64,000 nucleotides of DNA, from positions 44,640,001 through 44,704,000 of the forward strand of contig OZ076419.1 of assembly GCA_964187785.1 (NCBI GenBank), in the 5' to 3' direction. This document shows positions 37,495 to 58,345 of this stretch, one piece after another. The notes under the pieces were generated by a model that had not been told where the DNA came from, did not search any database, and saw nothing but the letters and a program-made list of their open reading frames with translations. The position numbers and the translations under genes are program-made. This DNA is from Amphiscolops sp. MND2022. Taxonomy: Eukaryota. The stretch's first letter is position 1; every line of letters begins with the position of its first letter.

Positions 37495-40400
37495 CTGGTA
37501 CATAATTTATGTTTGACAATTTTTCAATTCAATTTGTGTTCCGATTTTTTTCTTTCATGATCAAAGATTCTAAATTTGTTAAACTTACAGTAAGATATGT
37601 TCAGGAACCGTCCTATTGGACAGCGTGCTGTCGATCGTCACTGCAACTGTAGAGCTACCCTAGTCGAGCCTGCACGAACTTTTTGCATGTTGCATGAATG
37701 CATGCAGGGAAACTTTTTAAAAAACCTAGAAAATTCAAGGATCATGCAGGGGAAAATCTTGTAAAACTTTCCTGCATCTTTGAAAAATGATCAATTTTCA
37801 GATGAAAACTTTTAGAAAAAGACACTGCAGCCTTTGAATTTTTGAGCAAGAGTTCACTTGAAAACGATGACTTCGCTCGAAATCCTCTTCTGATAGAAAA
37901 CAAAAAAAAATAGAAAAATACACTAAATTTGATAAGTGAAATTCAAAACAACAAATTATAAAAATTATAAAAAAATTACAGTCTCAGTCTTACTTATAGT
38001 AGCTGAGGTTTTCGGGAACCATCTGACATCAAGAAACGGGACATCAAACTCGTAAAGAATCTGCAATAGTTGCAAGCAAGCTTCCACGACAGAAACGATT
38101 CCAGCGATATTGAGGCCGGCGTGAAAATATCGTCATTGAACAATTGTTGGGATCTACGTTCACTTTCTAAGAACTTTGAGTGTTTTTCGTTCCGAACGAG
38201 TCTCTGATTTTCTGCGAACCTTCAAATCATTCTTTCCTTTGATATGACAGCCACGAATGCTGCTTCTACATTGAATGGTTGTAAGTCCGATTTAATATAT
38301 TTATATGATTCATCTTTTGAAAGCTAAATGACAGCAAGAGGACAAAAGCATGATCGTTCTGGGCTAATTTGTTGCTCAGCTATGGGACTATGTATGGAAG
38401 TTATCACATCTGTTCCTTTATTCATTTGAATGCTCCAAGCTATTATCGTTCGTTGCAACTCGGGCTTGATGCTGCGACGACAACAATCTCTTGGCCTTTT
38501 CGACTTCTCGTCTCAATATTTCAAAATGATAAATGTTATTCGAAATTTTGAAAAAAAATTTCACGTCGAATGAAGAAAGTTTTGATTTTTTTGTTCCTTC
38601 TGAGAACTTTTTACTGAGAATAGCGTCAGTTCTTTTTTTTCCTTTCGATTCTCGATTTTAATAGGTAATAGGAAAGTCAAACTATGAAGTTTTAAACAGT
38701 CCAATGAAAATCGCTCATTTTCGACATTACGCTCTAAAGTAGTTCCATCAAGTTTTTCTCAGGATACCATGAAAACTTATAACTTTCTGCCCTAATGACT
38801 TGAAGTCGTGACAAATTTTCTATGACCTTATGTTTTTCAGGCGAAAAAAAATGAACCGCGCTGACGATTTTGAGACGAATTTCTTTGCTTCAGTGGCACA
38901 TTTAGATGAGTTCACATCAGACAAAAGTTTTGCGGGTTTTCGTCCTCTACAACTTTGATCATCATGATGCTGCTTACAAAACCCGCCAAATTGTGCATAA
39001 ACCTTGATTAAAACTAATAAGCTGATAATTAACTTAAATAATTATCAGCTCAACGGCGAAATTTTCGAGCATGAAAATAATTCAAAGAATCACCCAAAAC
39101 TTTATTAAAAGTATCAGGCAACCTATAAAAGCATGTAAAAAGTTCATGCACTGTGAACAAGGGTACCAACAGGGGTGTGCATGCAATAATCTATCGGAAG
39201 ATCAATAAATTATTGCAAAAAATAATTTATTAGAAAGCTTTTCACTATGAATAATTTATTGGCAGGAAATAATTAATAAAATAATTTATTGCATCATGCA
39301 ATAAATGGAACAATAAATGGGACATTGAATACACCTCGGTTCACATGTATTTGTTATGTAATATATACCATAAGATTAATATATACCGAAAGATTATGCC
39401 CACAGCCAAGTATATTTAGTGCCCACAGCGAAAATCAATGTCGCCCTATCATCTAGAATGTGTTCTGTCTTTGAAGACCAATAAATAGTATTGGCATGCA
39501 TCAATATGTGTTCAATTATGATGATTCAATATTTATAAATTATTGTAACATTACAATAATTTATTGTTTAAAACAAGTCTTATTATAATTTATTGTTTAA
39601 AACAAACAATCATTTATTGGTTAGTTTCAGCAATAAAATGACTTATTGTATCGTATCAATAAATATAAATGCAATATTGCGCACCCCTGGTTACCAAATA
39701 GCCGGCTTGGCTAATTTGATTTGAATGATATAATACGGGTGAAAGTTGGCAATTAATTAAGAATGAAAATTGAATTGAATAGGAAATTGGCAGTAATGAA
39801 TTATGAGAAATCTCAATTGGCAAACGAAGAAATTGAAATTTTGTAAATCCGTTTACGAACCTTGTCGGGACTGAACGAAATTTTCACCGAATGTCAGGAC
39901 TGCTGTGACGTCATAATTAAAATGATAACAAGAGACCAAATAACACAGCAACTGTGACGAATGTGCACGCTTGATTTCTTAGTTTGATTTCCATTTTACG
40001 GCCTGTAATGAGCTGTGACGTCATAGTTAAAATGATAACATAAGACCAAATAACACAGCAACTGTGACGAATGTGCATGCTTGATTTCTTAGTTTGATTT
40101 CCATTTTACGGCCTGTAATGAGCTGTGACGTCATAGTTAAAATGATAACATAAGACCAAATAACACAGCAACTGTGACGAATGTGCATGCTTGATTTCTT
40201 AGTTTGACTTCCATTTTACGGCCTGTAATGAGCTCGATACAGTATGGATACTATTTGCAGGCATAGAGCGGACATGAAGATTACGAAACTCTATCTCCAG
40301 CTCATCACAGTTTGTAAAATGACAGATTATCTTACCTTCAGCCCATGACAGTCCGTAAACTGAAAGATAAATAAATTTCATTAATAAACGCTAAACTAAA

Positions 40401-42614
40401 AAAATGCACGATAAAATGAAAGCTCTTATCTCTAGCTCATCACAGTCCGTAAACTGAAAGGGAACATGTCATCTATTTCCCCCCAGGTACACCTTGTTAG
40501 GAGTTCTCCCCAACACGAAAGCACATTTTCTTCTGGAATAAAAATACTTCACCAAGAAGAGAGTATTATATAAAAGTAAATACTTAGAGGATTGTCTCTA
40601 CTAATGTTTGGACACTTCAGGTTTAAAAATGCCATAATTGTTTGTTGATATTGTGCAAAATAGTAAAATTCCCGCTTGAACAAGATACAAAATTATAAAA
40701 AGGCCCCTATTTCACGCAAATTTTCTCCGTGACAAATCTAATGAGCCGTGCCTAATGATTATGTCGACAACAAGGGATCAGAAAAATCTATGGGAGTTCA
40801 CGCATCAAACATTGAAAATTCAGACTCAAAAATTGAAGATTATCCTCTTAGACCTTCAGAAATGAAAGATTTAGCACATCGTGATAAGCCTCTGTACGGA
40901 AATGAAATAGATTTAGACGCAACTATAGTATCAAATGATCACTCTGAGTCATGTATTTTAGGTCTAATGGTATACAATTAAGCTCATGGTATCAATCAAC
41001 TCTAGTGTAACTTTAGTGTAACTCAATCCACTTAAACAGCGTGAAACAGTGTAAAACAATCAAACTATAGTGTAAATCAATCAAGTTAAGCAGCGTAAAA
41101 CAATCAAAGTTGTTACTGAGTGAATTCAAATTTAAAGCGTCAGCAAGAAATTGTCTAGTATTAATGAATTAGTGTAAAGTAGTCAAACTTTGACTACTAT
41201 CCACTTTTTGAGGAGATTACTTTCTGAATTCCTCAAAAAGTGAATTCTAGTTAAAGTTTGACTGATTTACACTTGACACAATTTCTTGACTGGAATACAC
41301 TTTTTACGAATTACACTTAATGACTGAAATTCGTGAATCTGCGTTACACTGCTTGACTGAAATACGCAATATAATAGCTGATACACGTTACACTCCTTGA
41401 CTAAAATACGGTTGGAGACTATTTTACACTGAAAACATACTACACTTGATGATAAAAATTCACTTTTGCGGCTCATGTATCGTAATGAAGTTTATGAAAT
41501 CACGAGACCTTTACTGAACAACCGAAAAAATGTGTGGAAAGTTCAAGCAGTCCTCACAATTATATTCAACTTTTTTCACAAGTTTTTCTGTTAGGTCTCT
41601 TTTGTCACACCATTGTGAATGCCAGTGCAGTAGGTCCGAGGCGTTCTAGGGAATGCACGAGACACATGGTGGTACAAAATATACAAAACTCTATTTCAAC
41701 TAATTGGACGATGATAATCCAATAATCAAATAACTCAAATAACGAAAAAAGTCTAATTTTCAGGCGTTGCGATCAATATTTACGGACAATACGTTTGGAC
41801 CTTGATTACTTCTTACCCTGGTTGGAACTGCTTGAACTTTTTACAAGTTTTTGTAGGTTAACCTACAAAGCTAATTTTTCATGATTCTATAAATATCCCA
41901 AGGAAACGTCCAGGCAATAAAACTTCACTGATGCAATTTGATTCATCAAGCTGCCTATAAGATGCATCCTACAATTGGCGGCAAATATGAACCGCGAAGT
42001 TTTGCAGGTTTCATACAGACGCCGTTCTAATTTTGAAAGCAGCTGAGACCTTCATCAATTTTACCGCGGTTTCAATGCAAATAAATTTCAGTCACATTAT
42101 AAGTATCAAAGTAGCGTCATATTTAGCGTGCTATTCGTGACGGCTAACCGTGACGGTGTTTACGTAAGGTACTTACTTGAGAAACTTACCCGTGAAAACA
42201 AAGTGATCGCCGTGGTGAAGAAGTGGAAATGTTTTCAGTTTTAACTCAAATAGTGAAAGCTGCCTAGTAAACCTACAAAATGTTTCCATGCATAGTCCCT
42301 GAATTTTCCGTGTTTTATAAAAAATAGCCGGCATTTTATGAAGGTGCCTGTAAAATATCGCGGCAACTTCAACTAGGGTAGTTAGTGTGAAACCAATATC
42401 CGTCGGGAATAGGCTAACAAATCCAAAAGAGGAAGAAAATGATCTCAAAGCACTCAAGAAAAGAGGACATGACGTTCGAACAAGCCGAAAAAACAATAAT
42501 GCAAGGCATGAAACAAAAAAATCTGATATCATTTTTTTGTTTCAGAGGGTGAACCAAGGCAACATAAACCTCTGTAGACATTTGCAAGTATTTTGACCGG
42601 GGTGACGTCTCAAA

Positions 42615-42776
42615 ATGTGCAAATGCAGTATTGTAGAAAACGAGGATAGTGAAAGATTCGAACTCGTTAAAAAAGACTTCAGGAACGGATTCGTTCTCTT
42701 GAGAATACTTGTGCTCATTTTCTTCCTCTGGATCACTTTGAACCTGTTGGAATTCTTTGACGCCGGCCTCATCTAA
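42615..42776 (+). CDS. 53-aa MCxC small membrane protein, paralog 1
   Basis: MCKCSIVENEDSERFELVKKDFRNGFVLLRILVLIFFLWITLNLLEFFDAGLI*. Exon bounded by tttgtttcag (42545) and TTG|GTGAGT (42799). Confidence 0.6.
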   Translation: MCKCSIVENEDSERFELVKKDFRNGFVLLRILVLIFFLWITLNLLEFFDAGLI

Positions 42777-44003
42777 GGAGACTTCCAACTAACCTATTGG
42801 TGAGTTCCGCGCGGAAAACTTGCTTAATCACTAATGTGTCACTATATTCATCTCCAAGCTCCTTCCGAATATTGGCATCACTTGCGTCTTCGAGTTGTTC
42901 CTCGCAAAACACGCATTTTCTCGTTTTATCCAAAAATTCCAAATCATAAACGACTTCATTTCCAATTGCTCGTTTTCACATCTTTTTAAGCCACCAAAAT
43001 TAGGTGCCTACAATGTTTTGAAGGTTGTTCATGACAGAATTCAGTGTAAAAAAATTCGACTCTTTCATTGCGCAAAAATGCCATGATTCCCAGTATATCG
43101 AACAAAAGTGATTCGTCGTAGATTAACGTCATTTTAGCTGTTATTATTTTGGGTTGCATGACTCGGCCTTCTTTCGAGACGTTGCGCGACCATCCAAGTC
43201 GGCTTTCAAAACTAGCCTCTGCTCAAGTATTGGCATGCCGCTCGTCTTAAATCCTTTTTGCGCTTAGAGCACAGCTCTTTTCTGTTCAGAAAAAAATTAA
43301 TTCGATCATTTGCGAGATTCGGAATGAATGAATTCGGAGAATGTTACTGTGAGAAGAGATTTTACGTGCCTTTTTATCTAAAACCCCACGTAAAAAACTA
43401 ACTTTAGTATTTCAACAGGTGAATTTTTAATACTTAGAATGTTTCAAGGAATACAGAGCCTCGGCCGAACTAATATGGCTCTCTTTGGAATTATTTTCTG
43501 TGACATGTTCGAAAAATGTGAATATTGAAGGTGCTCCACCGTGAATCTTGTTTCAATCAAGTTGACGTTCGATACCGGAAACAATCTTACAACGGAGAAA
43601 ATTTTGTAGGAAATTAGACAAATCCATGGTGTGCGGGAATGGGAAGCAGAAAGCTTACAAATTTGGATGTAAAAACACGAAAGATGTAAAGAAGTCAACC
43701 TCAATTTTTTTGAACTACGTGATCAGTCATCAAAAAATAGCATGGATTAAAAGTCAAAACTTGACGGCGAGTGGCAACTAGAACCTAGGAGACATTGTCT
43801 ATGATCGGTATGATCGATCAAACAAGTTCCAGAGAGGAAAATGATCACGAGTCATTCTAAAAAAAACTCACTTTAGAACATTGATAAAATAATTCCAAAG
43901 AACACCAAACGAAGCTGTTTAGCATCCTTCTTTTGTTTCAGACTGGCAACCAAGTTTCATAGATAGAGAATTACAAGCACTTTGAACGAGGTGGCTTCCC
44001 AAG

Positions 44004-44156
44004 ATGTGCAGATGCATTTTTGAAAACGAGGATAGCGAAAACTTCGAACTCGTTAGAAGCGACCTCAAAAAAGGACTCTTGAGAATACTTGTCGTCAATT
44101 TTTTCCTCTGGATTGCTTTCAACCTCGTGGAAAACTTCGATCCCGACTTTATCTAA
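44004..44156 (+). CDS. 50-aa MCxC small membrane protein, paralog 2
   Basis: MCRCIFENEDSENFELVRSDLKKGLLRILVVNFFLWIAFNLVENFDPDFI*. Same exon layout (43942-44181). Confidence 0.6.
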   Translation: MCRCIFENEDSENFELVRSDLKKGLLRILVVNFFLWIAFNLVENFDPDFI

Positions 44157-44962
44157 GGAGACTAGACATAGCAACCTATTGGTGAGTTTTGCGGGCTCTT
44201 TTCTGTCCGCCCACCAATTTTTTTGAACAACTGGTGAAATTATTAGAAAAAAAATTGGAACTAATTCGGAAGCCTTCAGTTTTGAATTCATTGTCAAGAT
44301 GACTGTTTCGAATTCGAATATAAACTTTGTTCACACAATTTTGATTGGGATATCGGCTTTTTTTGAGTCTCAAAAACAGTTAATTTTACAAAATCACAGT
44401 CAAAACATGTGAAAAATCCTCTGTTCGAAGGAAAAACTATTCTAATAGAAGTTACGTTCCTGTTATGCAAAAAGGTCTTCATTACTTCAGCCTTTCACTT
44501 AACTCTAAAACTCAACTTTTCTTTAACTTATGTTTGAAATAAACCTGTTTTTTTTTCCGAAAAGTTCGATTGTGTGTGGGGGGGGGGGGATTTCAGGAAA
44601 ATGCGTTTTGCGCAACTAGCATTTTTTCACAAAAAGTTTCAATAACATATCAATTTTCACGCACTAGTAAATGTCTCCCTACCTTTCGTTTTTCCTTTTT
44701 TCTGCTCGAAAGTTTCTGGTTTTTACAAAAATTACAGCTGGTGAAAAAGTCACTTGCACCTGCTGTTCAAACTGTATCAGCTGTTTCGGCGGCTGAGGCT
44801 ACCGTTTGGTTTCAAAAATCCTTGCCAGTGGATTTTAGATGACCTCAAATTTATCCATGTTATTTTCCGCCCACATATAATGGGGGAGCAAAATAATCTG
44901 AGTTGCGTTTTATTTTCAAATTCTGCCAAATCTCCACTTTATTACTGCATTTAGTAAATTTT

Positions 44963-45035
44963 GGTTCTATGGCGCAGTTGGTTGTGCATCTGCCTGGCAG
45001 ACACGAGGTCGTGGGTTCGAACCCGTGCTGATGCC
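44963..45035 (+). other. tRNA-derived SINE-like sequence
   Basis: A box TGGCGCAGTTGG, B box GGTTCGAACCC; poor acceptor stem. Confidence 0.6.
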
Positions 45036-45283
45036 TTTCATTTTTGTCGGAAAAAAAATCGATGCTTAGCGGGCGCTTGTTTTATGTTACCGTTTTGTTA
45101 TCTTGGATGAAATGAGAAATCAACCAATGCTTTGGTTTCGCAATACTTTGAGCCGCCTAAGTCTCATCACGCGAGCTTTATTATTAGAAAAACCGCTTCT
45201 CTTGACTTTTTTCAAGAAATTCACACATATTTGGTGTTGCCGCATGATATCATATCACAATGATCGCGCCGTAATTGTTAGAC

Positions 45284-45352
45284 TACTTAGCATAGTGGAC
45301 CAATCCATGCCATCGAATCGGTCTGCGTGAGTTCGAATCTGCGACGGTGCTC
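45284..45352 (+). other. Second tRNA-like / Pol III-box relic
   Basis: TAGCATAGTGG at 45288 and GAGTTCGAATC at 45329. Confidence 0.4.
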
Positions 45353-45357
45353 TTCTT

Positions 45358-48300
45358 TGTTAAATCTGTTCCTTACTTTTCACCTCTGATTCATAAATCA
45401 TACTATTGACATTTAATATTGCTCATTTTCATGTACAATATATACCATTCATTGCTCACTAATATAAACGTTGTTATTACATACGTGTAAACAACCAGTT
45501 GAGACCTTTTTGTTGTCCCTTTGGCTTTAAATGCCTATTTTGTCGGTTAAAACCAACTGATAACCAATCCCCCATTTTTGTTTTCTCTTATCATTCCTTA
45601 TCATTCATACCGTCAATAAACGTTATCAAATACAGACCTCTTGCCTTGAGACAAGACTCAAATCTACTAGTTTGAACTCTATCTTTGAGTTCCTTCAATC
45701 GTCTAGGTTGAACTCTTTTTTGAGTTCCCTCGTTGTAGCTTGAGAGCTAGCGCGAAACATTGGTGACCTCGACGTGATGTCAACAGCAGATGGTCAAGAG
45801 GTTCAGACGGTTCTGGATGTGAGATGAAGTTGCCCCAGCTGAAGCGATCAAGAGAGGCGCATCGCGGCGTCTTCACAAGACAGGCAAAAGCAATCCGGCA
45901 AGCCGGTGGAGCGCTCGAGGACGTTCAGGCCACATTGGAGTTCCTGATTGATCGTCGCAAGATGCTGACAGAGTTGGATGCTCAGATTCAACAACTCATT
46001 GAAGACAAGGATGAGTTAGTAACCGATGTGGAATAAGCTGATGACGTGTTCATGGCAGCCGAAAGGGCAGTGAAGTGGTATCAGGGCAAGGTCAAGGCGA
46101 TGCAGCCTCCAAGCCCGAGCGGCGCAGTGGCTCCATCAAGTGGCAGTCTGACCATGAAGCTCCCGAAGCTGACCCTTCCTTCATTCAGCGGTGAATACAC
46201 ACAGTGGGTCTCTCTGGGACCAATTCACAAAACTGGTTGACAGCAAAGTTGACATGGCCAACGTTGAGAAGCTATCATACCTCAAGTTGTCACTGAAGGG
46301 TGATGCAGCTCAGACAGTTTCGTCACTGTTGGTCATGCAAACTAGTTAGTTAGCACTGATTTCACTGAAGCAAACTACGACATTGCGAAGCGAAAGTTAG
46401 AAGAGCGCTACAACAACAAGCGTTCAATTGTGAAAACGCACTTAGCTGCAATTCATGCCCTACCAGCCATAAAACGGGAGTCAAGTGTCGAGCTGCGAAA
46501 ACTGTTGGAATCGACGAACGAACATGTGCAAGCACTAGTAGCTTTGAGGCTTCCCGTTAATCAATGGGATGCAATACTAGTGTACTGGCTGCTGAAGAAA
46601 CTAGACGCTGAATCCAGGAAGCAGTTTGAATTGGCTCATCCCGGCACAGATGTGTTAACATTCAAGGAGTTAACTACATTCATGGATAGACAAAGCCGCG
46701 CATTGGAATCCAGTGGCGACCAGCCGGAGGTATCTACCCCCAAGACGACGCCCAAAAAGGTGCATCAAGAAGCCTACTCCTCAACGGTTGAGCACTCAGC
46801 GAGTTGTCAGATGAAAGTATGCAATGGGTCACATTCAACCTCTCAGTGTGATCACTACAAGCATTTGGGCACGCGTGAGAAGAAGGCAGTGGTGAGAATG
46901 CTCAAACTGTGCATGAACTTTCTGGGGCGGAATTTCGTGGCTGACTGTCCATGAGTTCAGCTACCGCACTTGCAACGGGAGGCATCATACATCACTGCAC
47001 TTTGATCGTCCAGTCAAGCAGCAAAGTGGTGTGACAAGTGGTGCAACATTCAGTGGTCCCTCTGTGATTCTGTCAACAGCAATAGTTGGCATAGATGCTG
47101 CAACTGGAAAGACAATGATGTTTCGAACCTTGCTGGACTCTGGGTCTCAAACATCCTCCCTCACAGCGGATGCAGCATCAAAACTCAACATCGCCCGTTC
47201 AACAGTTGATGTGAAGATCCCAGGGCTTAGTGGACGGCAACAAGCAGCAAATGAGACAGTCAATCTCGTGATTGGTCCTCAAAAACTGCCGTGCTCTAGT
47301 GCTGAACTCAATTGCAGGTAATATACCCTCTCAATCCAATAACTTGAAACAATTGAAATCAATGAAAAATGTAGCATTAGCTGATGAAAACTTCCATTAA
47401 CCTGGCCCCGTTCAATTGTTGGGCGCGATGTGTACGAGGATCTCTTTCTGGACGAAAGGAGGAAGGCTCATGGGCTTCACTATCGCAAGATTATCGTCGG
47501 CTGGGTGGTCAGTGGAGTGTTGTCTCAAGTTCGTGCCTACCAATGCAATCCTTCTTGCCCCAAGTTGCAGTGGAAGTAGAGCTTGCTCGCTTCTGATAAG
47601 GTGAAGAGTGTCCTCGAGTGAACCCTATGTCCAAAGCAAATCGTCAATGTGTGGAAAATTACGATACAACGACGTATGTTGCTGATGATGACCGAATCAC
47701 CGTGCGTCTTCCTTTCAAATCTGAGGCATGTCCCTTGAACAACTTTCAAACAGCCAAGCAGAGATTGTTCGCCTAGGAACGAAAACTCAAGGATCACGAT
47801 GACGTGAAGCAGCAGTATCGTGATTTCATCAAGGAGTTTGTGGATATGGGTCATCTTGAACAAGCGCTTCAGACGTCTGGTTTGCGTTACTACTTACCCC
47901 ATCACTGTTTGTTCAAGGATAGCACAACGACTAAGCTCCGTGTCGTGTTCGATGCTAGCAGCAAAGCCCCGAATGGCAACTCGCTTAACGATTGCCTATT
48001 GCTGAGACCCCGGTTGCAGGACGATGTGTTTGATATTCTCATTCGTATTCGCCTCCAACAATTTGCATTATCGGCAGATGTGGCGAAGATGTACCGACAA
48101 GTGGACTTAGACGAATCAGATCGAGATTTTCATCGAATTCTGTAACTTGACTACGTAACAAGATCCGAGAATTGCGCATAACTCGTGTGACGTATGGTGT
48201 TGCCAGCTCCACCTACCAATTAACCCGAGCACTTCAAGAGAGTGGCAAAAATCATGGACCAAATCCGAACACAGTGAATGTGATTCTCAACGACTTCTGC

Positions 48301-49352
48301 GTTCGTCAAGACGATCTCATTGAAACCCTCAGCAAGAACTGTCGCCCACTACGCACGTGGAGCAGCAACGAACCCCAACTGGTCACTCGTCTTTCGAAAG
48401 ACCTTCAAGAAGCTGACAAGGCCTATGGAATCAACGTCAAAACCCATCATAATCAAAACACTTGGACTGACGTGGCATCCTCTAAAGGATCACTTTGTGT
48501 ACGCATGTAGTAGTGAGTATGTTTCAACCATTACCAAACGAACTTTGCTCAGTGATCTTTCAAAGCATTTTGATGCAATTGACCTCATAGTTCTCGTAGT
48601 AGCCAAGGCCATCATTCAGTCTTGCTGGAAGCTGGATGTCGAGTGGAATGATGCAGTTCCAGATGATGTCACAGCCATACAAAACTTGAAAAGATGACAT
48701 GAGCTCGCTATCACAACTCAAGATACCCGGAAGGTGCTGCCAACTCACTTGTACAAGGAAGCATCTATGATGACTCGGAAAAAGCGTATGATGCTTGTGT
48801 CTATCTGGTGTCAGTCAAAGATAACCTCGTCTCCTCAACCTTCATCTTCTCCAAATGCAAGGTGGCTCCAATCAAACCCTCAACTCTCCCTCGACATGAG
48901 CTCTTGGCAATTCACACTGGTGCCAACCTTGCAACAGCAGTCAAGGGGAGACTATCAGAATCAAAGCACACATTGAATATCTCTGTGCTGTACTCAGACT
49001 CAACAATCGCCCTCTCATGGATCAAGGCAGACCCTGCTCAATTGTATACGTTTGTGTCAAACCGCGTGACCCAAATTCAGTCAAGGCTCCCAACAACTGA
49101 ATTCATTCACGTACCCTCAGAGGAAAACCCAGCAGATCTGTGCTCACGTGGACTGCTAGCAACGCAGTTGGTGGCTCAGCAGAAATTCTTGTTTCAAGGA
49201 CCATCGTGGTTGGGATCATCTTTTCCTGATCAACCGCAGACTCTCCTCACAAAGGAGGAAGTCCGCCAAGAAGTAAAATCCATGACAGTGTTAACTTCAC
49301 CCAGTCATTCGTTAGTAGACTTAGAGAATTTGAACTCACTAATGAAGTTATT
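45358..49352 (+). mobile_element. BEL/Pao LTR retrotransposon A, 5' part (LTR, PBS, gag, protease, RT, RNase H), degenerate
   Basis: Candidate LTR TG..CA 45358-45759; PBS TGGTGACCTCGACGTGAT. Motifs KLPKLTLPSFSGEYTQW, LLDSGSQTS, YYLPHH..KLRVVFDAS, SADVAKMYRQV, PRHELLA, SDSTIALSWI, HVPSEENPADLCSRG. Many stops and frameshifts. Confidence 0.9.
45761..45778 (+). promoter_or_regulatory. Primer-binding site, tRNA-Trp type
   Basis: 17/18 match to the canonical tRNA-Trp PBS TGGTGACCCCGACGTGAT. Confidence 0.8.
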
Positions 49353-52300
49353 AATGGTGTTAAAACAGTCATGTCATTCGGATCATCTGATGATGGTACT
49401 AGGGGCCTTGAATTGAGTTTGCTCTAAATTTGCGCGAGGAGAGTCAAGAAATTTTCAAGATGGAAAGTGTGAGTTTTCATTATCCTGCGGAGATGGTGCT
49501 TCAGTGATTCAATGCCAGCCTACCAGAGACCACCGAAATGGGGTGCTCGAGCTGGCATCAGGAACCAATCGGTTCCAAGTTGAGAGAAGTCATTGCTTAG
49601 CTCCAAAATGTCTTTGCGAGCAGCAACAAAAGTTGTGGCATTGTCCGAGTAAAGTTGTGCTGGTACACCCGGCGGGCAATAAAACGCTTGATGGCATTAA
49701 CACAAGATTTTTTCGTCAACGACAACATTACCTCTAATTGAATTGCTTTAGTCGTAAAACATACAAAAATAGCTAAGTAAACTTTAGAAAATTGAGGCGT
49801 CTTGACATCTATTGAACCGGTAAAATCAATCCCGGTTATTGAGAAAGGCTGAGACTCTGTGAAACGCTCAGTAGGCAGGAATTTCTTCAGCAATTGTGAC
49901 TTTGAATTGTAAAACGTCTTTGTTTGGCAACCAAGATGCTCCGAGAGTTTTAACGATGTAATCTTTACTTTCGACAACTGAATCATCATCGGACTCGCGA
50001 TAATACTTGTCCAAACACTTGATAAGTTCTGACTTGTTCGAGGTTCATTTGCGTAAATCAAAACCTCCAGTTTTCAAAGCTGCGATTAGATCTTTTTGAA
50101 TTTGGAAAGCTTCTTTTAAGGAAAAACAACGGCTAAGAAGATCGTCCACGTAAATATCATTTTTGATTATTGTTCTAAGAACTGTGTCAGCTAACTTTTC
50201 AGCAATAACAAAAAGAGCTGGAATGGAATAATACGACGAAGGAACAAGACCGTAAGTAACTCTGGTTATTCTCAAATGTTGCATTGGCTCTGCACTATTC
50301 TCGCGCCAAAGTATTCTTTGGAAATCTTTGTCTTCATCGGTTAATATAACTTGTCGATACATCTTTGCAATATCAGCAGAGAACACTATAGGATAAAACC
50401 TGAATCGTAAAAGAATTGCCAAAAGATCGTTCTGAATTTTCGGGCCGACCATCAAAATTTCGTTCAAAGAAGTTCCTGTTGACGTTTTCGCAGAAGCGTC
50501 AAAAACTACTCTCAGTTTAATCGTTTTACTGCTATCTTTCAGCACACAATGATGCGGTAGATAAAAAACCTTTTCTGAAGAAATCTCGATTTGTTCTTTT
50601 GGCACTTCTTCCATATGACCTAATTCGATGAACTCGTTTATGAAAGCCGAATTATTTGCTTTGAGGCCTTTGTCTTCCTTGAGTTTTTCCTCCAGACTCA
50701 GAAATCGTTTTTGTGCGTTGCATAATGAATAACCCAAGTTCGAACTGTTCTCTTTGAATGGCAACTTTACAACAAAACGATCATGGTCATCCCTGCGGGT
50801 AGTCTGGGTGAAGTGATCTTCACAAAAAACTTCTCTTGTTTTTGTTTGATGTTGAGGTACGTCTTCTAATTGCCAAAACTTTTCTAAATGTGAAGGACTA
50901 CTTTCAACATGGAATATTTGTAAAGTACTGCTTGAGGTATCTGATGAATTTACGGATCCTATAACAACCCATCCGAAATTTGATTCTCTCAGATGTAAAG
51001 ATTTGGTCATTTGAATTTTTCTCTCCAACATAAACTGTTCGACAACTTCGGCCCCAAGCACAATGTCTATCGGACCTGCTTTGTAAAATTCTGGATTTGC
51101 CATGTTCCAATGCTCGAACTTTTTCCATGAATCATCCTTTAGGATGGTTTGGTTAGGAAGGAATCCAGTCAACCTTGGTAGTACTAAAGCTTTCGAATTA
51201 ACACATTCCTTGGAACTTTTAACACTGAAATGAAAACTAGAAGGATTCGAGAAATTCACATTTCCGCCATTTCCGCTAACTTTTACGTTCAAATGCTCCT
51301 GTTTGAGATTCAATTTTTTCGCACAAGACTCTGTGATGAGATTTGCTTGTGCTCCTGTATCGAAGAGAGCACGACATGGGACTGTAACACCACCTAAACC
51401 AACAACTTGAATGACTGCAGTGGGTAAAAGAACATGACTTTTGTCGCTATTGAAAGCAATGTTGACGTTTTCGGATGCTTCTGTTGTATTGGTTTCCACT
51501 TCATTGAAACGATGGAGTAAAGAATGATGACCTCTTCCACAATGTTTACAACAAGAACTCTTACAAGCCGTTATCATATGTCCAGGTTTCAAACAATTGA
51601 AACACAACGCATGACGCTTGATTAGGTCTGTTTTATCAAAGGAAGATAAGTTTTTGAACTTTGGACAGGTGAAATTTTTGTGCTTTTCGCCACAACATTC
51701 ACAAAAAGTTTCTTCGCTTGCTGTATAAACTTGGGTTCTTGGTTGTGTTGTATGAGCACTTTTCGGGGTTTTTTCAATCTCTCGTCTGTCTTTTCGAATC
51801 CTCGTTACACTTTCGGCAGCTTCTAGGCCGCGACATCTGTTGTGTAAAAACGTTTTTAACCGATTGATAGTTTGTTGATCAGTACCAGGAGTTGCAATCT
51901 CCCATTCTTGTCCTCTTACGGACTAAGCTTTTCAATGACTATGTAAAGCAAAAAGAGATCTTGTTCTCCAACATTATGACCCAGGTTGGATAAAGCTAAT
52001 CTGTGTTCTTCGACTGATTCAATTAACAAATTCAGTGATTTGGAATTTTCTGTCACTTCATGAGGAATATTCACAATGCTTTTGACATTTGCACGGGAAA
52101 TGAGGCGAGGATTAGAATAACGGTTTTTGAGAATTTCTTTAGCTCTTTCATAATTGGTGTCACTTATTGTGACAGAGGATAATAGTTTAGCTGCATCACC
52201 TTTCAAGCTGGCTTTTAGATAATGTAACTTCTGTGAGTTGCCTTACTTTGAATTTGTTTCATCAGAACCTTGAAAAAGATCTATGAAACTCATCCAGTCT

Positions 52301-53142
52301 GTGTAATTCCCAGAAAACGTTGGTAAACTAATCTTTGGTAACTTTAAGCCTGTTGCATCTGTATTTAGGAAAGGAACTTGTACTTGGAAGAGAAGACTCT
52401 TTGCACTGCTTAACTTTTGTATAAAACGATTTATATTGTCAGCATTGTCACTAATCCTGTCATTCAATTCTGTACTTTCAACGTCATTGTCAAAAACTTC
52501 TAATCCCAACAGAGATTGATTTTTTTCGTCTAGATCTTGTAATTGGAGCAAATTAGCTTTGAGGCGAGTCTCAGCTCGTTCTAACTTGATCAGATCTTGC
52601 TCTGATATCGTTGTTAGTTCTTGATCTAGTAACAACTCTACTTCGGTGTAATATCTTGTGGCAATGCCTCGATGTGCCGCTCTTGATTGTTTCTTGGCTT
52701 CAATTGCTGTCATTGATCAGGCAATAGTTTTCACACGTGGTAGACTTTTGAATAATAACGGTAACTAAGCTCAAAATTGTGATAATTTTGTTTCGAAGGA
52801 ACTTGGATAACTGAAAAAAGTGAATCAAAATTTGGCTTGTGTCAGTAGGTGTAATGAACCGGAGAAAACCTATGCTTGGCTTTCCCAAGATGCAAGAGGA
52901 ATGAAAATCTGGAGAAATACTAAGCTTTCATGGTGTAAACTGTGGGTTTTCCTGTGTTGTCTGTAGCTGTTTCGACATCTTTTTGTGGGGCGCCATTATG
53001 TTTTTGGTTCTTTTAGTTACTATTTGTTTAGTTGCTGAGCTTAAGTTGGACTATTCTTAAAAGCTGCGTTTTTTACAAACTTGATTGAGAAGTAGAAATA
53101 AAACCAATGAATATTACATCAACTAAATGATTAGTCATAACA
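49353..53142 (-). mobile_element. BEL/Pao element B, antisense, RNase H deleted and 3'-truncated
   Basis: Candidate LTR 53142-52999, PBS-like TGGCGCCC. Motifs LKLPKISLPTFSG, CFNCLKPGH..CKHCGRGHHSLLH, LFDTGAQ, YLPHH, YVDDLL, then directly integrase GIDFTGS..FVCFTTKAIQLE..LNSRPL. Confidence 0.88.
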
Positions 53143-54385
53143 TGAGTGATAGCTTCAAACTCATGTAAAATAGTCATAACAGCGATCTTTGGTCGGAAGG
53201 AAATGGCTCTCGCCTTGTATGCGTTGGTCAAAGCAGATCAGATGGCACACTTCGAAGACGAGTTCAAAGCCATCTCAAAAGGAGAGCTCGATGGCACCCC
53301 TCTATCCATTCATGGACAACGGCGTCATCAGGCTTGGCGGCAGATTAGCCCACGGGTACTCAATGACTGACGATCAGCGGTTCCCTTTACTGGTGTCACA
53401 CCGAAGCAAATTGGCTACGCTTGCAACCAACGATGGCCACAAACGAACCCTTCATGGTGGTCATACAGTAACAGTGGCAGAGATGAGATGTCAAATCTGG
53501 GTCACTTAGGCAATGAAGAAGGCGTCAGCGTGTATCAAGAAGTGCGTCACGTGCTTCCGCTTAAACTCAGAGCCAACACAGCAGCTCATGGGTGACTTGA
53601 CTTCCAGTCGCATTGAGGTTCCCGAACGTGATTTCTCTTATGTGTGCCTCGACTTCACAGGACCTCTAACATTCAAAAATGGAACTGAATGTGTCAAGGG
53701 TTACGTAGCTGTGTTTATATGTTTGGCTTCAAAGGCAGTTCATCTAGAGGCAGTATCATCATTGACGTCAGATGCGATGGTGGTAGCCCTAAGACGATTC
53801 ATTGCAAGACGAGGCATCCCCAGTCAAATTGTGTCTTACAATGCAACCAACTTTGTGGGTGCAAGGCGTGACCTCATCGAATTGGAGGAAGTGGTTCGGG
53901 CAGGGACACAATCATACAGCAGCATTGAATAGCTATCCATTCCTCCTCGCTCACGCAACTTCGGTGGACTATGGGAAGCAGCGGTGAAGTCAAAGAAGCA
54001 CCACTTGCGAAGAGTTATGGGCATTTCGAGGAAATGAGAACCATTCTATGTCAAATAGGACAAGTGTTGAACAATCGTCCATTGATGGCTCTCACAAATA
54101 ACCCAGATGACATCTTTGGTGCTCACCCCGTCAATGCTAGTCATTGGCAGCCGATTGGAGGCTATCCCACATGCCTATTTGCAAAAGATGGATGTCCGCG
54201 GGCATCCACTAAAACGATTTCGTGCGCTTCAACAGCTGCTCTCTCAATTCTGGAAGCGATGGTCCTCTGGTATGTAGCATCACTTCAGCCGTGAAGCAAA
54301 TGGCGGCAAGAACGTGCAAACCTCTCAGGTGATGACATGGTACTGATCACAGACGACGGCATTCCATCACCACATTCTTGGGTTT
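53143..54385 (+). mobile_element. BEL/Pao integrase region (probable 3' half of element A), degenerate
   Basis: GVIRLGGRL, HKRTLHGG, CVTC, LDFTGP, FICLASKAVHLE, RRFIARRG, NATNFVGA, LNNRPL, and a C-terminal W...GDDMVLITDD segment. Confidence 0.88.
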
Positions 54386-56229
54386 TTTTGTCAAATCTGT
54401 TTCTCGGTCTGATGAAATTGGGATTTTGTACTTGTTTTTTTTTCGTTCTTTCCATCGTCGTGGATTGATTTTGTCCCGATTGTTCGGACATGTTTGGGTC
54501 GGTCTTCATTTTTTGATATTTCTTTTATCTTGCTGATTTCGCCATGTAATAGACTGATTTAAAGATCCACTAAAAAGTTGAATTAAAATTACGATGTAAC
54601 AATGACCAAAAGCTTCTGTATCGTATTCAATCCAAATGTAATTATTGTGTAGCACATTTACATTAACATAAGAGAGTATTGTCTTTTTTGGCAGATATTG
54701 GTCAGTCTAGACAGTTGATTTTTTCACTACAACACTGAAATTATTCATTTTTGGGAAAGTTATTTTATATATTCAACAATGCCGATATACTAGTTGAAAA
54801 TGGTGAAACTTTTTACTGGCTTAATTAAAAAAAATTTTTTTTCACAACAGAAAGTCAGCTTCTACCGGAATAGTTTTTCGTTTGAACAAAGCATTTTTCA
54901 CACATCTGATTTCTGAGTTGTCATCCTGAGAACAAACATAAAATTTAAGGTATCTACCTATTTCCGTGTTCTAAAATTTTCGCAAAATTAAAACAGAAAA
55001 GAACCCTGGAATAAGACAAAAGCTACCCTCACAGGGGGACGCTCTCACTAACATTTTGCCTGTCTTAGCCTTATCAAATTTCCCTTCCAAGTCTTTTAGG
55101 ATATGGATCCCATGGCGAGATGCCTTTTAGGAATATATTAGAGTAAATCATACATTCAAGATCGAAATTTGCCAAAATTGAAATCTGATTAGGAGTTCTT
55201 GAAAAGAGTTTCACTTTTGTTCAAACTTCTTGCCAGATATTCATGGGCCTATTTCAATGTAGATAAATGTTTTCTGCTAAAATGGAGATTTTGAGGTTCA
55301 ATGCAGAGTTTGCATTCAATTGTTTCAAGTGAACAAGTCTTCATTTCCAAGCAAAACTAGGCCCTATTGCAAAGGTTTGACATTTTTCGAGTGGCTGAGA
55401 AAAATTGTTTGTTTTTAATAATTATTTGGGAGATAAGATTTATTAGAAAAGAGACAAATAACACCATTTTCTGAATCACAAAATGGGGGACGTTTGGGTA
55501 GACAATGTATGTGGCTCATGCGGCCAGCTTGATTACAATAATCTTTGGATTTTATAGGACAAATTAAAAAAAACTAAGAAAAAAACGGCGAAAAGCTTGA
55601 AAGACGGTTCATTTTCACAATTTGCTTACTGGTTCAAGACTGTCTTCTGATTTCATAGAAAAGTTAGTAACATCTGATATTTGCCTTCAATATAGAAAGC
55701 GAGAGGTAACAGGAAAGGAGATTTTCCGCTTCCACGAGTTTGTAGAGCTTTGTGAAAATATTGAAAAGGTAACTTGATAGATGATTGTGTGATTTTATGT
55801 GATGTGATGAAAGTGATGTGAAGTGTTTGATATATGAAATCTAATTGGAATGGAAAACTTGAAAATGAAAAAAAAATCAAAATAAAAAACGTATTTGGGT
55901 TAAATCTGATTGTTGAAACATATGAGGTTTGAATTGGAAAAAAGTCAGAAAATATTTTGATGGACAAAGCAAAGATAGTTCGTTCGATAAGACTTTGAAA
56001 ATAAAGCCCAGGAAAGCATTTTCAAGAAAAAAATCGAGGATAGATGATATATAGTAAACATTGCATTTGGGTAAAATATAATTGTTTTCAGCAACATATT
56101 GGGGTTAGTTCTGAAAAAATGCCCAGGAAAGCATTTTTACGAAAAAACCTTGATAGTTGGATAAGACCAAGGTTGTGTGTTTTAGATAGTGAAACCAAGC
56201 AGGGCCTGTTTATCAAAAAAGTTTCGCCA

Positions 56230-56415
56230 ATGTGTGACTGTGGCGGGGGTCATCATCACCACAGACGCCATCGTCACCACCACCATCACGTGACGTCAGA
56301 GGACGGTTATCGTCCAATCAGCGACGCCTTCTCAATCGGCAGCTTCCTCAGGACATTCGTGTTCATCTTCGTCATTTGGGCGTCAATTGGTCTTGTCGAG
56401 TACCTGGATGCTTAG
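56230..56415 (+). CDS. 61-aa MCxC, His-rich small membrane protein, paralog 3
   Basis: MCDCGGGHHHHRRHRHHHHHVTSEDGYRPISDAFSIGSFLRTFVFIFVIWASIGLVEYLDA*. Acceptor at 56185 and TTG|GTAAGA just after the stop. Confidence 0.6.
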   Translation: MCDCGGGHHHHRRHRHHHHHVTSEDGYRPISDAFSIGSFLRTFVFIFVIWASIGLVEYLDA

Positions 56416-58345
56416 TTGGTAAGAAACTTTGGATCTTTTATGTTACCCCCCCCCCCCCCAGCGTACTGGCTGAAAAAATATTTTCCCCCTTCAACATTCC
56501 ATGTGTTAGGATAAGAATCGTAGTATATGACTCACTTCCTAATGACTCACTTCTAAATGACTCACTTCTCATCAATGAATGGGGGGGGGGGGGGGTTTGG
56601 GGATAACAAATTTGCTGGGCGAAAAAGTTTCTGAAGTTGAAAGCATTGACGACTTTTTTTCTGAAAAACTAAACTTCAGACTGACTGGCGTGAGTAAAAG
56701 CAAATCCTTTTCTCTAACACAAGTTAACATCAATTAGGATAGTTGTTTGTTTGAATAAAACTCTTTTCACAGTTTGACTGTGATTGTGTTCGAATTGACT
56801 GTTTTCTTTGTGACTCAAATTGTGTTTTCTGTAAATGCGTAAAATTTCGAGTGGAACCTATCTTTTGTTTTTCCATTTAAAATAGCTTCTGAAACTTTTG
56901 TTGAGAAATTTTTGGGGGTTTGGGTGTCGGAGGGAAGGGGTAAAAAAGCGTCTCTCATGGACAATAGGATTTTTCACTTAAAAATTAATAAAATAATAAT
57001 AAAATAATTTATATAAAGAGGTCTTTAGTAATCGTCTTACATATACACGGAACAGATGATAGAATTCTCAGTATCTCAAATTCTAGTTCAAACTGATCTT
57101 CTAACAATGACGTCATTGATTCGTTTCAGAAAAAAAAGACTGCGATATAAAAAGAGCAAAAGACCTGTAAAAAACAGTGAAGAGCAGATAAAGACCATGG
57201 ATCCAATTAAATGATGGCGTTTGGATAACTAATTGCAACTAAGCCTGGAAACCAAGTTGAACTGAAACAAAACTACCTTACATATCTTTGATATGCCAAC
57301 TTCCCATACAAAAATTAATTTATGCATTGCATATTTTTAGCACAGAAAAAATCTAAAAGCATGATTAGCAAAATTTTAAAAAGCTGGAAAAAGTCGAAAC
57401 ATGATGCATGTCCAATGCCCGTGATTGAAGTTGCTGATAGTTCCCAAATTAGAGCAATGATAAATCTGATACATTATTTGACTGCAACAGATCAGTTGCA
57501 GTGTGGTGTGGATTCTTCACATCGATTACATTACGTGGGTTTTCAAGAAATGAGGGAAGTGGAGTGAAACAATTTTCTGGATTCTTGCACTAATACCTGC
57601 GTAACCTGCGAAGAAACAAAATTTTCACTGTTTTCCTGAATTCTTGAAATTTTGTGGATTCTTCGTTTCAGCAATTATTAGCAAATATTAGTTTGCGGGG
57701 ATTTTTCACTAATTAGGTCACTTATTTGAGTTACTAAATTTTTGTAAGTAACTGGGCGAAGTGAGCAATGCACTCTAGGCAATGTTGTCGTAAATCGCAA
57801 CCAATAACAGAAAAAAAACAGTTTGATGTACTATTCAGGTTTATAGATTTTCATTTTCCCGCCGTTATGAACCAATGTACGTTTTTCGTCAATTTTCAAA
57901 CTCCAGAACAAACGCTGGCAAAGGCGCAAAATTTGGATCACCTGGGACTAGCCCAAAATTTATCTCAAATCTATTTGAGGTTTCTTCCGAAAATCTTCCG
58001 AAGTTTGACAAAATGCCTGTTTAAGCAAAAGTGCCCGAAAGTTTCAAGTTCTTTGAAAACAACGAACGAGACTGGCAAAGAATGATCAATCACGGAAATC
58101 CAAATGTACTGATTTTAAAAAAAATCATTTACTTGACGAAGTTTATTTGCCAAGAACTTTTGACAAGAATCGCAAAACGATAAACCATTGTTTTATGTTA
58201 ATAGTTCTCATTTTGAAGCGTTGCGAAGTCCATTTTTCCAAATTTTCAATATTTCCAGCTCACCGGGCGCTTTTGTTTGGTATGTTCAGTTTCCAATGTT
58301 CAATTTTATATTGAATTTTATTTATGTTCAATTTTATATTGAGTT

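What the first reader, a model, noticed from the sequence alone, without database searches (positions are those of the whole stretch)
42546..56418. Family of three MCxC-initiated single-pass membrane microproteins largely missed by the ORF track
Seen: ORFs at 42615, 44004 and 56230 (53, 50, 61 aa) share M-C-x-C, a polar linker, then LR..V..F..W...L.E..D near the C-terminus. Each sits on one exon with an acceptor 44-69 nt before the ATG and a TTG|GT donor 3-25 nt after the stop. Paralogs 1 and 2 have an in-frame stop just upstream of the ATG and show synonymous changes (AGT/AGC, GTG/GTC). Inference: a real selected microprotein family, possibly palmitoylated or metal-binding; I recognise no homolog.
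Basis: partly seen in the sequence, partly recalled or inferred. Interest (0 to 1): 0.7.

Follow-up and report, generated by a model that had tools for sequence, protein, structure and literature searches.

The report
Three tail-anchored microprotein exons, acoel worm
Three small neighbouring exons in this acoel-worm genome most likely each encode a 50-61-residue membrane-anchored protein that starts Met-Cys-x-Cys and has no known relatives. The sequence evidence for coding is good, but no RNA data could be reached and the function is a guess.

Summary
Three + strand ORFs (42615, 44004, 56230; 53, 50 and 61 aa) each lie inside one splice-flanked block. An acceptor lies 69, 62 and 44 nt before the first ATG. 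A TTG|GT donor lies 23, 25 and 3 nt after the stop.

Copies 1 and 2 are clear paralogs (66-67% aa identity), and their DNA similarity stops at the splice sites. Copy 3 is unrecognisable as DNA but keeps:
- MCxC;
- AACCAAG 7-8 nt after the acceptor;
- a transmembrane core significantly like copies 1 and 2 (window E 5e-4; 0 of 5000 shuffles), with synonymous sites saturated (pS 0.87-1.06 against pN 0.32).

That is a protein-level selection signature. Copy 1 against copy 2 alone is weak (dN/dS 0.43, P 0.17).

The exon is not a dispersed repeat, and the genome holds only these three members. No homolog appeared in 1.84 billion proteins, Pfam, PDB, the ESM Atlas or metagenomes. Leads to Mpv17 and to phospholamban/sarcolipin failed.

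The genome carries the published Symsagittifera roscoffensis spliced leader, so the acceptors could be trans-splice sites. No RNA run was available, so transcription, gene model and function remain inferred.

Verdict: a probable orphan family of tail-anchored microproteins, of moderate interest.

The parts
42546..42799 (+). Exon 1 (254 nt): 69-nt ATG-free leader with AACCAAG at 42552-42558, ORF1 at 42615-42776 (53 aa), 23-nt trailer. Acceptor cag at 42543-42545, donor GTGAGT from 42800.
   Evidence: Sequence. ORF. Similarity to exon 2 starts at the polypyrimidine tract and ends 7 nt into the intron.
42615..42776 (+). ORF1: 53-aa microprotein with MCKC, an acidic ENEDSE stretch, and a C-terminal hydrophobic helix (Kyte-Doolittle 19-residue maximum 2.54 at residues 27-45).
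   Evidence: The AlphaFold2 model is a single helix over residues 5-52, with mean pLDDT 94 for residues 31-40.
43942..44181 (+). Exon 2 (240 nt): 62-nt ATG-free leader with AACCAAG at 43948-43954, ORF2 at 44004-44156 (50 aa), 25-nt trailer. Acceptor cag at 43939-43941, donor GTGAGT from 44182.
   Evidence: It is the only other DNA copy of exon 1 in the genome (76% identity).
44004..44156 (+). ORF2: 50-aa paralog starting MCRC, 66-67% identical to ORF1. It differs from ORF1 by 3-nt and 6-nt indels.
56186..56418 (+). Exon 3 (233 nt): 44-nt ATG-free leader with AACCAAG at 56193-56199, ORF3 at 56230-56415 (61 aa), 3-nt trailer. Acceptor tag at 56183-56185, donor GTAAGA from 56419.
56230..56415 (+). 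ORF3: divergent 61-aa member with MCDC, a Gly3 plus His/Arg run (HHHHRRHRHHHHH), a polar linker, and a hydrophobic core ending VEYLDA.
   Evidence: It is the top non-self hit of the ORF1+2 profile among 1,513 six-frame segments of the window (E 5.3e-4). No shuffle of 5000 reaches its score.

Best explanation
The three blocks are real exons of an animal gene or genes. The genome carries the spliced leader published for the acoel Symsagittifera roscoffensis.

Each exon holds a complete small ORF for a tail-anchored, single-helix membrane microprotein. The N-terminus faces the cytosol and carries Cys2-x-Cys4. Next comes a charged linker, acidic in copies 1 and 2 and a His/Arg run in copy 3. The last roughly 25 residues form a conserved helix (LR..V..F..W....L.E..D) with a short acidic end.

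Shown here:
- the ORFs, the splice-type boundaries and conservation confined to the exon;
- protein-level constraint on the helix;
- the family has three members and is single-locus, with no detectable homolog.

Inferred:
- The MCxC AUG is the first AUG of the mature mRNA, whether the acceptor receives the ATG-free spliced leader or an upstream 5' exon.
- The stop lies close enough to the following 3'-UTR intron to avoid nonsense-mediated decay (the 50-55-nt rule).
- The protein inserts post-translationally, most likely into the ER or early secretory membranes. The hydrophobic span is short (about 17-18 residues) and the tail is acidic, not basic.
- The conserved helix face docks onto a larger membrane protein, or onto copies of itself, as other regulatory micropeptides do.
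- The Cys pair is lipidated or binds metal.
For: Exon reality:
- Copies 1 and 2 are 79-86% identical over the acceptor tract, ORF, trailer and first 7 intron bases, and 65% over the leader. The flanking introns show 43-50% identity, which I take as the background level of a forced global alignment of AT-rich sequence.
- All three blocks have a pyrimidine tract plus YAG, and a TTG|GTRAG donor.
- AACCAAG sits at +7, +7 and +8 from the acceptors.

Coding:
- ORF indels are 3 and 6 nt, while the leader and trailer indels are 7 and 2 nt.
- Only the + frame is open in all three copies.
- The ORF1+2 profile finds ORF3 at E 5.3e-4 in the window, and the next hit is at 0.31.
- No shuffle of 5000 that preserves composition and the hydrophobic block reaches the observed score.
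- In the 22-codon core, copy 3 against copies 1 and 2 has pS 0.87-1.06 (saturated) against pN 0.32-0.33. Seven of the 9-10 identical residues use different codons.
- Identity by codon position is 0.49/0.72/0.30.

Not a repeat: there are two DNA copies and three protein matches in 1.07 Gb.

Topology: Kyte-Doolittle 19-residue maxima are 2.0-2.5 at the C-terminus, and the model is one helix over residues 5-52.

Trans-splicing is available. The published 32-nt spliced leader matches more than 2000 times, and 30.2% of genes in that species are trans-spliced (PMC9911081). The leader and all three exon leaders lack ATG (read).
Against: - There is no transcript evidence. The only runs served are four DNA data sets from one sample.
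- Copy 1 against copy 2 alone does not reject neutrality (dN/dS 0.43, P 0.17; P 0.08 with the no-stop condition).
- Third codon positions of copies 1 and 2 (72% identical) and the untranslated parts of the exon are much more alike than the introns. Either RNA-level constraint or exon-limited gene conversion therefore also acts.
- Two antisense frames are open in copies 1 and 2.
- The codon-position test on copy 3 uses a protein-guided alignment, which favours positions 1 and 2.
- No ortholog is known in any other species. Annotated proteomes often leave out proteins this short, so the blank is weak evidence either way.
- The neighbourhood is rich in transposable elements, and no 5' or 3' partner exon was identified.
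- The function has no direct support.
Confidence: 0.6

Rival explanations
1. The blocks are real exons of a non-coding or UTR-type transcript, duplicated in tandem. The constraint acts on the RNA (splicing enhancers, structure, the AACCAAG leader element), and the ORFs are incidental or only serve as short regulatory upstream ORFs for a main ORF elsewhere.
For: - Leader, trailer and third codon positions of copies 1 and 2 are conserved far above the introns.
- dN/dS between copies 1 and 2 is not significant.
- A donor follows each stop, so every transcript must continue.
- No protein homolog exists anywhere.
Against: - Copy 3 has lost DNA similarity (no blastn hit) yet keeps MCxC, the open frame, the hydrophobic core and the stop-to-donor arrangement. 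Its synonymous sites are saturated while nonsynonymous change is restrained.
- No downstream main ORF was found. Only Pao/BEL retroelement and integrase ORFs lie downstream.
Confidence: 0.2
2. The three ORFs are cistrons of one polycistronic smORF transcript (exon 1 - exon 2 - exon 3 spliced in series), like tarsal-less/pri or sarcolamban in insects, rather than three separate or mutually exclusive mRNAs. This is a variant of the main reading and differs only in the gene model.
For: - All three are on the same strand within 14 kb, and each exon has both an acceptor and a donor.
- No other conserved block, such as private 3' exons, lies between or after copies 1 and 2.
Against: - In a serial transcript the first two stops would lie more than 200 nt upstream of later exon junctions. 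The conserved closeness of each stop to its own donor would then have no point.
- The 12-kb gap before exon 3 is filled with retroelements.
- This could not be tested without RNA.
Confidence: 0.12
3. There are no exons here. A small duplicated fragment and an unrelated third ORF merely mimic splice sites and a shared motif.
For: There is no expression evidence, the region is full of repeats and transposable elements, and the family is tiny.
Against: - The conservation boundaries coincide with consensus splice signals in copies 1 and 2.
- Copy 3 shares four independent features with them: MCxC, AACCAAG at a fixed offset, the helix core, and a TTG|GT donor just after the stop.
- The stretch 42326-44314 is single-copy.
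Confidence: 0.06

Closest known systems
SERCA-regulating micropeptides (phospholamban, sarcolipin, myoregulin, insect sarcolamban)
   Same: All are proteins of about 30-60 aa with a cytosolic N-terminus and a single C-terminal helix that carries the conserved positions. They are ER-type tail anchors encoded by small ORFs that annotation misses. ORF2 has L-V-V-N-F where phospholamban and sarcolipin have L-F-(I/L)-N-F (sequence reading; the PLN and SLN sequences were verified).
   Different: There is no detectable sequence relationship. Pfam found neither the phospholamban nor the sarcolipin family, and hhalign against a PLN/SLN alignment gave a probability of 0.9%. The key Asn is absent from ORF1 and ORF3. 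The MCxC start and the acidic end after the helix have no counterpart in that family.
Polycistronic or tandem smORF genes (Drosophila tarsal-less/pri, sarcolamban)
   Same: Several paralogous small ORFs sit in one locus on one strand.
   Different: Here each ORF has its own splice-flanked exon, and whether they share a transcript is unknown. The peptides are unrelated.
N-terminally dual-Cys lipidated proteins (PSD-95 Cys3/Cys5, GAP-43, RGS16) and Met-Cys N-degron substrates (RGS4/5/16, plant ERF-VII). These examples are from my own knowledge.
   Same: A Cys at position 2 and a second Cys two residues on. ORF1 and ORF2 start MCK and MCR, like RGS4/5 and RGS16.
   Different: Those are soluble or peripheral proteins with folded domains, whereas these are tail-anchored helices. 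No modification has been tested.
Mpv17/PMP22 family (PF04117)
   Same: ORF2 residues 12-42 give a weak Pfam match (E 0.0076, 16.7 bits).
   Different: The score is below the 27-bit gathering threshold. ORF1 and ORF3 do not match. The window does not appear among the genome's PF04117 hits, and there is no similarity to the genome's own Mpv17 exons. I treat this as noise.

Membership tests
Tail-anchored membrane proteins (topological class) | A single hydrophobic helix within about 30 residues of the C-terminus, and no N-terminal signal sequence | tested here: met
   Kyte-Doolittle 19-residue maxima of 2.0-2.5 at residues 27-45, 24-42 and 38-56, with 5-8 residues after them. The N-termini are polar or charged. 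The AlphaFold2 model is one helix over residues 5-52.
Tail-anchored membrane proteins (topological class) | Post-translational membrane insertion with the N-terminus in the cytosol | not testable with these tools
   This needs expression and a protease-protection or glycosylation-tag assay.
Phospholamban/sarcolipin (PF04272, PF05366; SERCA regulins) | Sequence or profile similarity to the family | tested here: not met
   No Pfam hit at E up to 10. No PLN or SLN chain appeared in the PDB profile search. hhalign of A2 against A3 gave a probability of 0.9%.
Phospholamban/sarcolipin (PF04272, PF05366; SERCA regulins) | Conserved L-F-x-N-F motif with the inhibitory Asn | tested here: not met
   LVLIF, LVVNF and FVFIF in ORF1, ORF2 and ORF3. 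Asn is present only in ORF2.
Phospholamban/sarcolipin (PF04272, PF05366; SERCA regulins) | Binds and modulates the SERCA pump | not testable with these tools
   SERCA plus the peptide exceeds the 1000-residue limit of the complex tool, and the worm's SERCA is a multi-exon gene.
Mpv17/PMP22 (PF04117) | Score over the gathering threshold (27 bits) | tested here: not met
   16.7 bits, and for ORF2 only. The window is absent from the genome-wide PF04117 list. Only noise against the genome's own Mpv17 loci.
Polycistronic smORF genes (tal/pri type) | Several smORFs translated from one mature mRNA | not testable with these tools
   No RNA run was served.
   The exon DNA has 2 copies. The protein or profile has 3 intact copies. 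Read depth over 42459-44102 is at the unique level.

The most novel reading that the evidence does not exclude
The invariant Met-Cys start makes these tail-anchored peptides substrates of the Cys N-degron pathway: Met removal, then Cys2 oxidation by an ADO-type thiol dioxygenase, then arginylation and degradation. Their abundance on the membrane would then report oxygen or NO. That would be a membrane-bound oxygen sensor in a worm whose symbiotic algae drive large swings in tissue oxygen between light and dark. Alternatively, the CxC plus His/acid tracts make them membrane-tethered metal buffers or chaperones. The evidence does not exclude either reading. The genome has PCO_ADO-family exons over the Pfam cut-off, and copies 1 and 2 start MCK and MCR like RGS4/5/16 (my own knowledge).
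Probability: 0.05. Interest if true: 0.75.

Novelty: new variant of a known kind. Interest (0 to 1): 0.38.

Why it matters
If they are expressed, these would be a lineage-restricted family of tail-anchored micropeptides in Acoela, a group used as a proxy for early bilaterians and as a photosymbiosis model. Standard annotation misses them. Proteins of this kind (regulins and similar) are potent modulators of pumps and transporters, so an orphan family with an invariant N-terminal Cys pair and a conserved helix face is a concrete candidate for a new regulator. The practical lesson is methodological. The best coding evidence came from the most diverged paralog, not from the close pair.

Tried and rejected
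1. RNA support. The look-up of sequencing runs gave only four DNA data sets from one sample. Laying them showed one contig over 42326-44314 with no variants and no splice-type joints in the unique part. So there is neither expression nor polymorphism data.

2. Homolog searches, all blank:
- word-index search with ORF1
- exhaustive profile search of 1.84 billion representatives
- ESM Atlas with ORF1 and ORF3
- metagenome contigs
- exact-product look-ups
- PDB profile search, which gave only aquaporin noise at E 0.8
Annotated proteomes often leave out proteins this short, and records of this genome or a very near one may be left out of some of these collections. The blanks therefore do not show that other acoels lack the family.

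3. Mpv17/PMP22 lead from Pfam: rejected.

4. Phospholamban/sarcolipin lead from memory: no profile similarity.

5. Dispersed-repeat explanation: rejected.

6. Antisense coding. Two antisense frames are open in copies 1 and 2. One gives 4.5 synonymous against 25.5 nonsynonymous changes. The other shares the sense wobble position (13 against 17). Neither is open in copy 3, and the splice signals fit only the + strand.

7. Extra family members. Weak tblastn hits L003-L012 and L015-L019 are junk or carry stops.

8. Private 3' exons. No second conserved block lies around copies 1 and 2.

9. Organism. Hydra SL-B1 is absent, so the 'hydrozoan' label in earlier notes is wrong. The acoel spliced leader is present.

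10. No complex prediction was run, because no binding claim is made.
Full report
**What is there**

The window is eukaryotic: a 1.07-Gb genome, and the window is C11:44,640,001-44,704,000. On the + strand, ORFs at 42615-42776 (53 aa), 44004-44156 (50 aa) and 56230-56415 (61 aa) exist as described.

Reading the sequence gives three splice-flanked blocks:

| Block | Coordinates | Leader before the ATG | Trailer after the stop | Acceptor | Donor |
|---|---|---|---|---|---|
| Exon 1 | 42546-42799 | 69 nt | 23 nt | tttttttgtttcag | TTG/GTGAGT |
| Exon 2 | 43942-44181 | 62 nt | 25 nt | ttcttttgtttcag | TTG/GTGAGT |
| Exon 3 | 56186-56418 | 44 nt | 3 nt | tgtgtgttttag | TTG/GTAAGA |

- ORF1 and ORF2 have in-frame stops upstream of the ATG. 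ORF3 is open back to 56044.
- None of the three leaders contains an ATG, so the MCxC ATG is the first in each exon.
The only slip is the motif spacing, which is W....L rather than W...L.

**Is it more than chance?**

- Among 496 ATG-ORFs of at least 40 aa in the whole window, on both strands, exactly three start M-C-x-C, and they are these three.
- The heptamer AACCAAG occurs nine times in the window (about 11 expected). Three of the nine lie 7, 7 and 8 nt after the three acceptors.
- The exon is not a dispersed repeat. Its DNA has two copies in the genome.
- The proteins, or their profile, find only these three loci. The weaker hits are junk.
- Read depth over 42459-44102 is at the unique level, while flanking repeats reach 10^4-10^5.

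**Exons**

Aligning 600 nt around copies 1 and 2 shows similarity switching on at the polypyrimidine tract and off 7 nt into the intron:

| Segment | Identity |
|---|---|
| Upstream flank | 50% |
| Acceptor tract | 79% |
| Leader | 65% |
| ORF | 80% |
| Trailer | 79% |
| Donor +7 | 86% |
| Downstream flank | 43% |

The 43-50% in the flanks is, by my judgement, the background level of a forced global alignment. Boundaries that coincide with consensus splice signals on the + strand are hard to explain unless these are used exons.

**Coding**

Between copies 1 and 2 the two indels inside the ORF are 3 and 6 nt, and those outside are 7 and 2 nt.

The substitution test on this pair is weak, however:
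- There are 9.5 synonymous and 20.5 nonsynonymous differences, giving dN/dS 0.43.
- Random placement of the same 30 changes gives as few nonsynonymous changes 17% of the time, and 8% with the added condition of no stop.
- Two antisense frames are also open in copies 1 and 2. One of them shares the wobble position with the sense frame.

The decisive evidence is copy 3:
- It has no DNA-level similarity to copies 1 and 2.
- A profile of ORF1+ORF2 nevertheless ranks its frame first among 1,513 six-frame segments of the window. The E-value is 5.3e-4, and the next hit is at 0.31.
- None of 5000 shuffles reaches the observed score, even when only the hydrophobic block is shuffled within itself.
- In the 22-codon core, copy 3 against copies 1 and 2 shows pS 0.87-1.06 (saturated) against pN 0.32-0.33. 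Seven of the 9-10 identical residues use different codons.
- Identity by codon position is 0.49/0.72/0.30.
- Only the + frame is open in all three copies.

One caveat applies: the alignment is protein-guided, which favours positions 1 and 2. Together with the independent MCxC and leader-motif matches, I take the three to be homologous protein-coding exons (about 0.7-0.8).

One unexplained detail remains. In copies 1 and 2 the third codon positions (72% identical) and the untranslated exon parts are far better conserved than the introns. Either RNA-level constraint or exon-limited gene conversion must therefore also act.

**What the protein looks like**

- Each product has Cys2-x-Cys4 and a charged linker. 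The linker is ENEDSE-type acidic in copies 1 and 2, and Gly3 plus HHHHRRHRHHHHH in copy 3.
- A Gly follows, then a hydrophobic helix that starts with L-R and ends with E..D. The Kyte-Doolittle 19-residue maxima are 2.0-2.5.
- AlphaFold2 on the three-sequence alignment gives one helix over residues 5-52. Mean pLDDT is 74, and 94 for residues 31-40.
- Only 5-8 residues follow the most hydrophobic 19-residue stretch, and there is no signal sequence. This is a tail-anchored topology.
- The hydrophobic span is short and the tail after it is acidic. From general knowledge of tail-anchor targeting, this argues for the ER or early secretory pathway rather than mitochondria or peroxisomes. This is inference.

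**Organism and expression route**

I tested both:
- The Hydra SL-B1 leader (sequence from PMC7986045) has no match.
- The S. roscoffensis 32-nt spliced leader published in PMC9911081 matches more than 2000 times at up to 2 mismatches, many of them exact.
- That paper reports an assembly of about 1.1 Gb, 36.7% GC, 61% repeats (mostly LTR elements) and 30.2% of genes SL trans-spliced. All of this agrees with this window.

The three acceptors could therefore be trans-splice sites. The leader has no ATG, so MCxC would be the first AUG of the mRNA. This is inferred. Each stop lies 3-25 nt before a donor, within the 50-55-nt limit below which a downstream intron does not trigger nonsense-mediated decay (general knowledge). 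This fits a short ORF followed by a 3'-UTR intron.

Whether the three exons belong to three mRNAs, to mutually exclusive forms or to one polycistronic RNA cannot be decided. No other conserved block accompanies copies 1 and 2. The 12 kb before exon 3 is filled with Pao/BEL-type retroelement pieces.

**RNA evidence**

None could be obtained. The one run search returned four DNA data sets from one sample. Laid on 41500-45600, they give one variant-free contig across 42326-44314 and no splice-type joints there.

**Comparison with what is known**

No homolog was found:
- by the word-index search;
- by an exhaustive HMMER profile search of 1.84 billion cluster representatives, with 0 hits at E up to 0.001;
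- in the ESM Atlas, metagenome contigs or PDB.

Annotated proteomes often leave out proteins this short, and records of this genome or a very near one may be left out of some collections. The blank therefore does not show that other acoels lack the family.

Pfam gave one sub-threshold hit: ORF2 to Mpv17_PMP22, 16.7 bits against a cut-off of 27. The genome's real Mpv17 genes lie elsewhere, the window is not among the PF04117 matches, and the ORFs show only noise against those loci. I rejected this lead.

From memory, the helix start resembles the LFxNF region of the SERCA regulins. I verified the phospholamban and sarcolipin sequences against PDB, aligned them and compared profiles. hhalign gave a probability of 0.9%, and the key Asn is present only in ORF2. 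The family is therefore not a member of the regulins. It may still work like one, as a small tail-anchored helix docking on a larger membrane protein, but that is analogy only.

**Function**

My best guess is a regulatory or accessory tail-anchored micropeptide. Its conserved helix positions (L29, R30, V33, F36, W39, L44, E46, D49) would contact a membrane partner or other copies of itself. Its N-terminal Cys pair would be either S-acylated or would bind metal together with the acidic or His tract. N-terminal CxC acylation is known in PSD-95 (my own knowledge).

A more adventurous reading is Cys2 N-degron control by an ADO-type dioxygenase. PCO_ADO-family exons are present in the genome. None of this was tested.

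**Verdict**

This is a new, orphan variant of a known kind, the tail-anchored smORF micropeptides. Interest is moderate (0.38). Deep RNA-seq mapping and acoel orthologs would quickly raise or sink it.

Noticed in passing
window 1-36000: Large direct segmental duplication with a period of about 23,056 bp. The same series of minus-strand ORFs recurs (1614/24670, 3140/26196, 7351/30403, 8523/31575, 9834/32887) with identical lengths. Other notes of the scan describe these as Transib/RAG1-like and SET-domain ORFs.
   Followed up: no
window 39902-40234: Three copies of a 110-bp tandem repeat (97% matches). Each unit carries the palindrome TGACGTCA, which resembles a CRE/ATF site.
   Followed up: partly
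window 41774-42458, 44377-44513, 44788-45061: Extremely high-copy repeats. Summed contig depth is 10^4-10^5 against about 10-55 for the unique DNA between them. The stretches at about 44960-45030 and 45280-45350 look tRNA-like (GGTTCGAA-type box B), but ARAGORN calls no tRNA. They are probably tRNA-derived SINE heads.
   Followed up: partly
window 45700-54300 and 61751-62407: Decayed Pao/BEL-type LTR retroelement pieces on both strands, apparently nested or adjacent (DUF1759 gag, Peptidase_A17, aspartyl protease, rve integrase), plus a further integrase ORF at 61.7 kb. They fill the 12-kb gap between exons 2 and 3.
   Followed up: partly
window 56003-56156: Local direct repeat of about 113 nt upstream of exon 3 (GCCCAGGAAAGCATTTT...GAAAAAA... 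occurs twice). It has ATGs at 56044 and 56119 in frame with ORF3 and a second possible acceptor at about 56090. A longer 98-123-aa form of ORF3 is therefore not excluded.
   Followed up: no
L003 (G000:C8:21126641-21126769, +): Weak match to the ORF1 helix (E 0.02, 45% over residues 9-50), interrupted by four stops and preceded by a Lys/Ser-rich open frame. It may be a decayed relic of the family or chance.
   Followed up: partly
whole genome G000: The published 32-nt S. roscoffensis spliced leader occurs more than 2000 times at up to 2 mismatches, spread over all large contigs. This is far more than expected for SL RNA genes alone. It fits earlier notes of the scan that retroelement copies carry the leader.
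   Followed up: no
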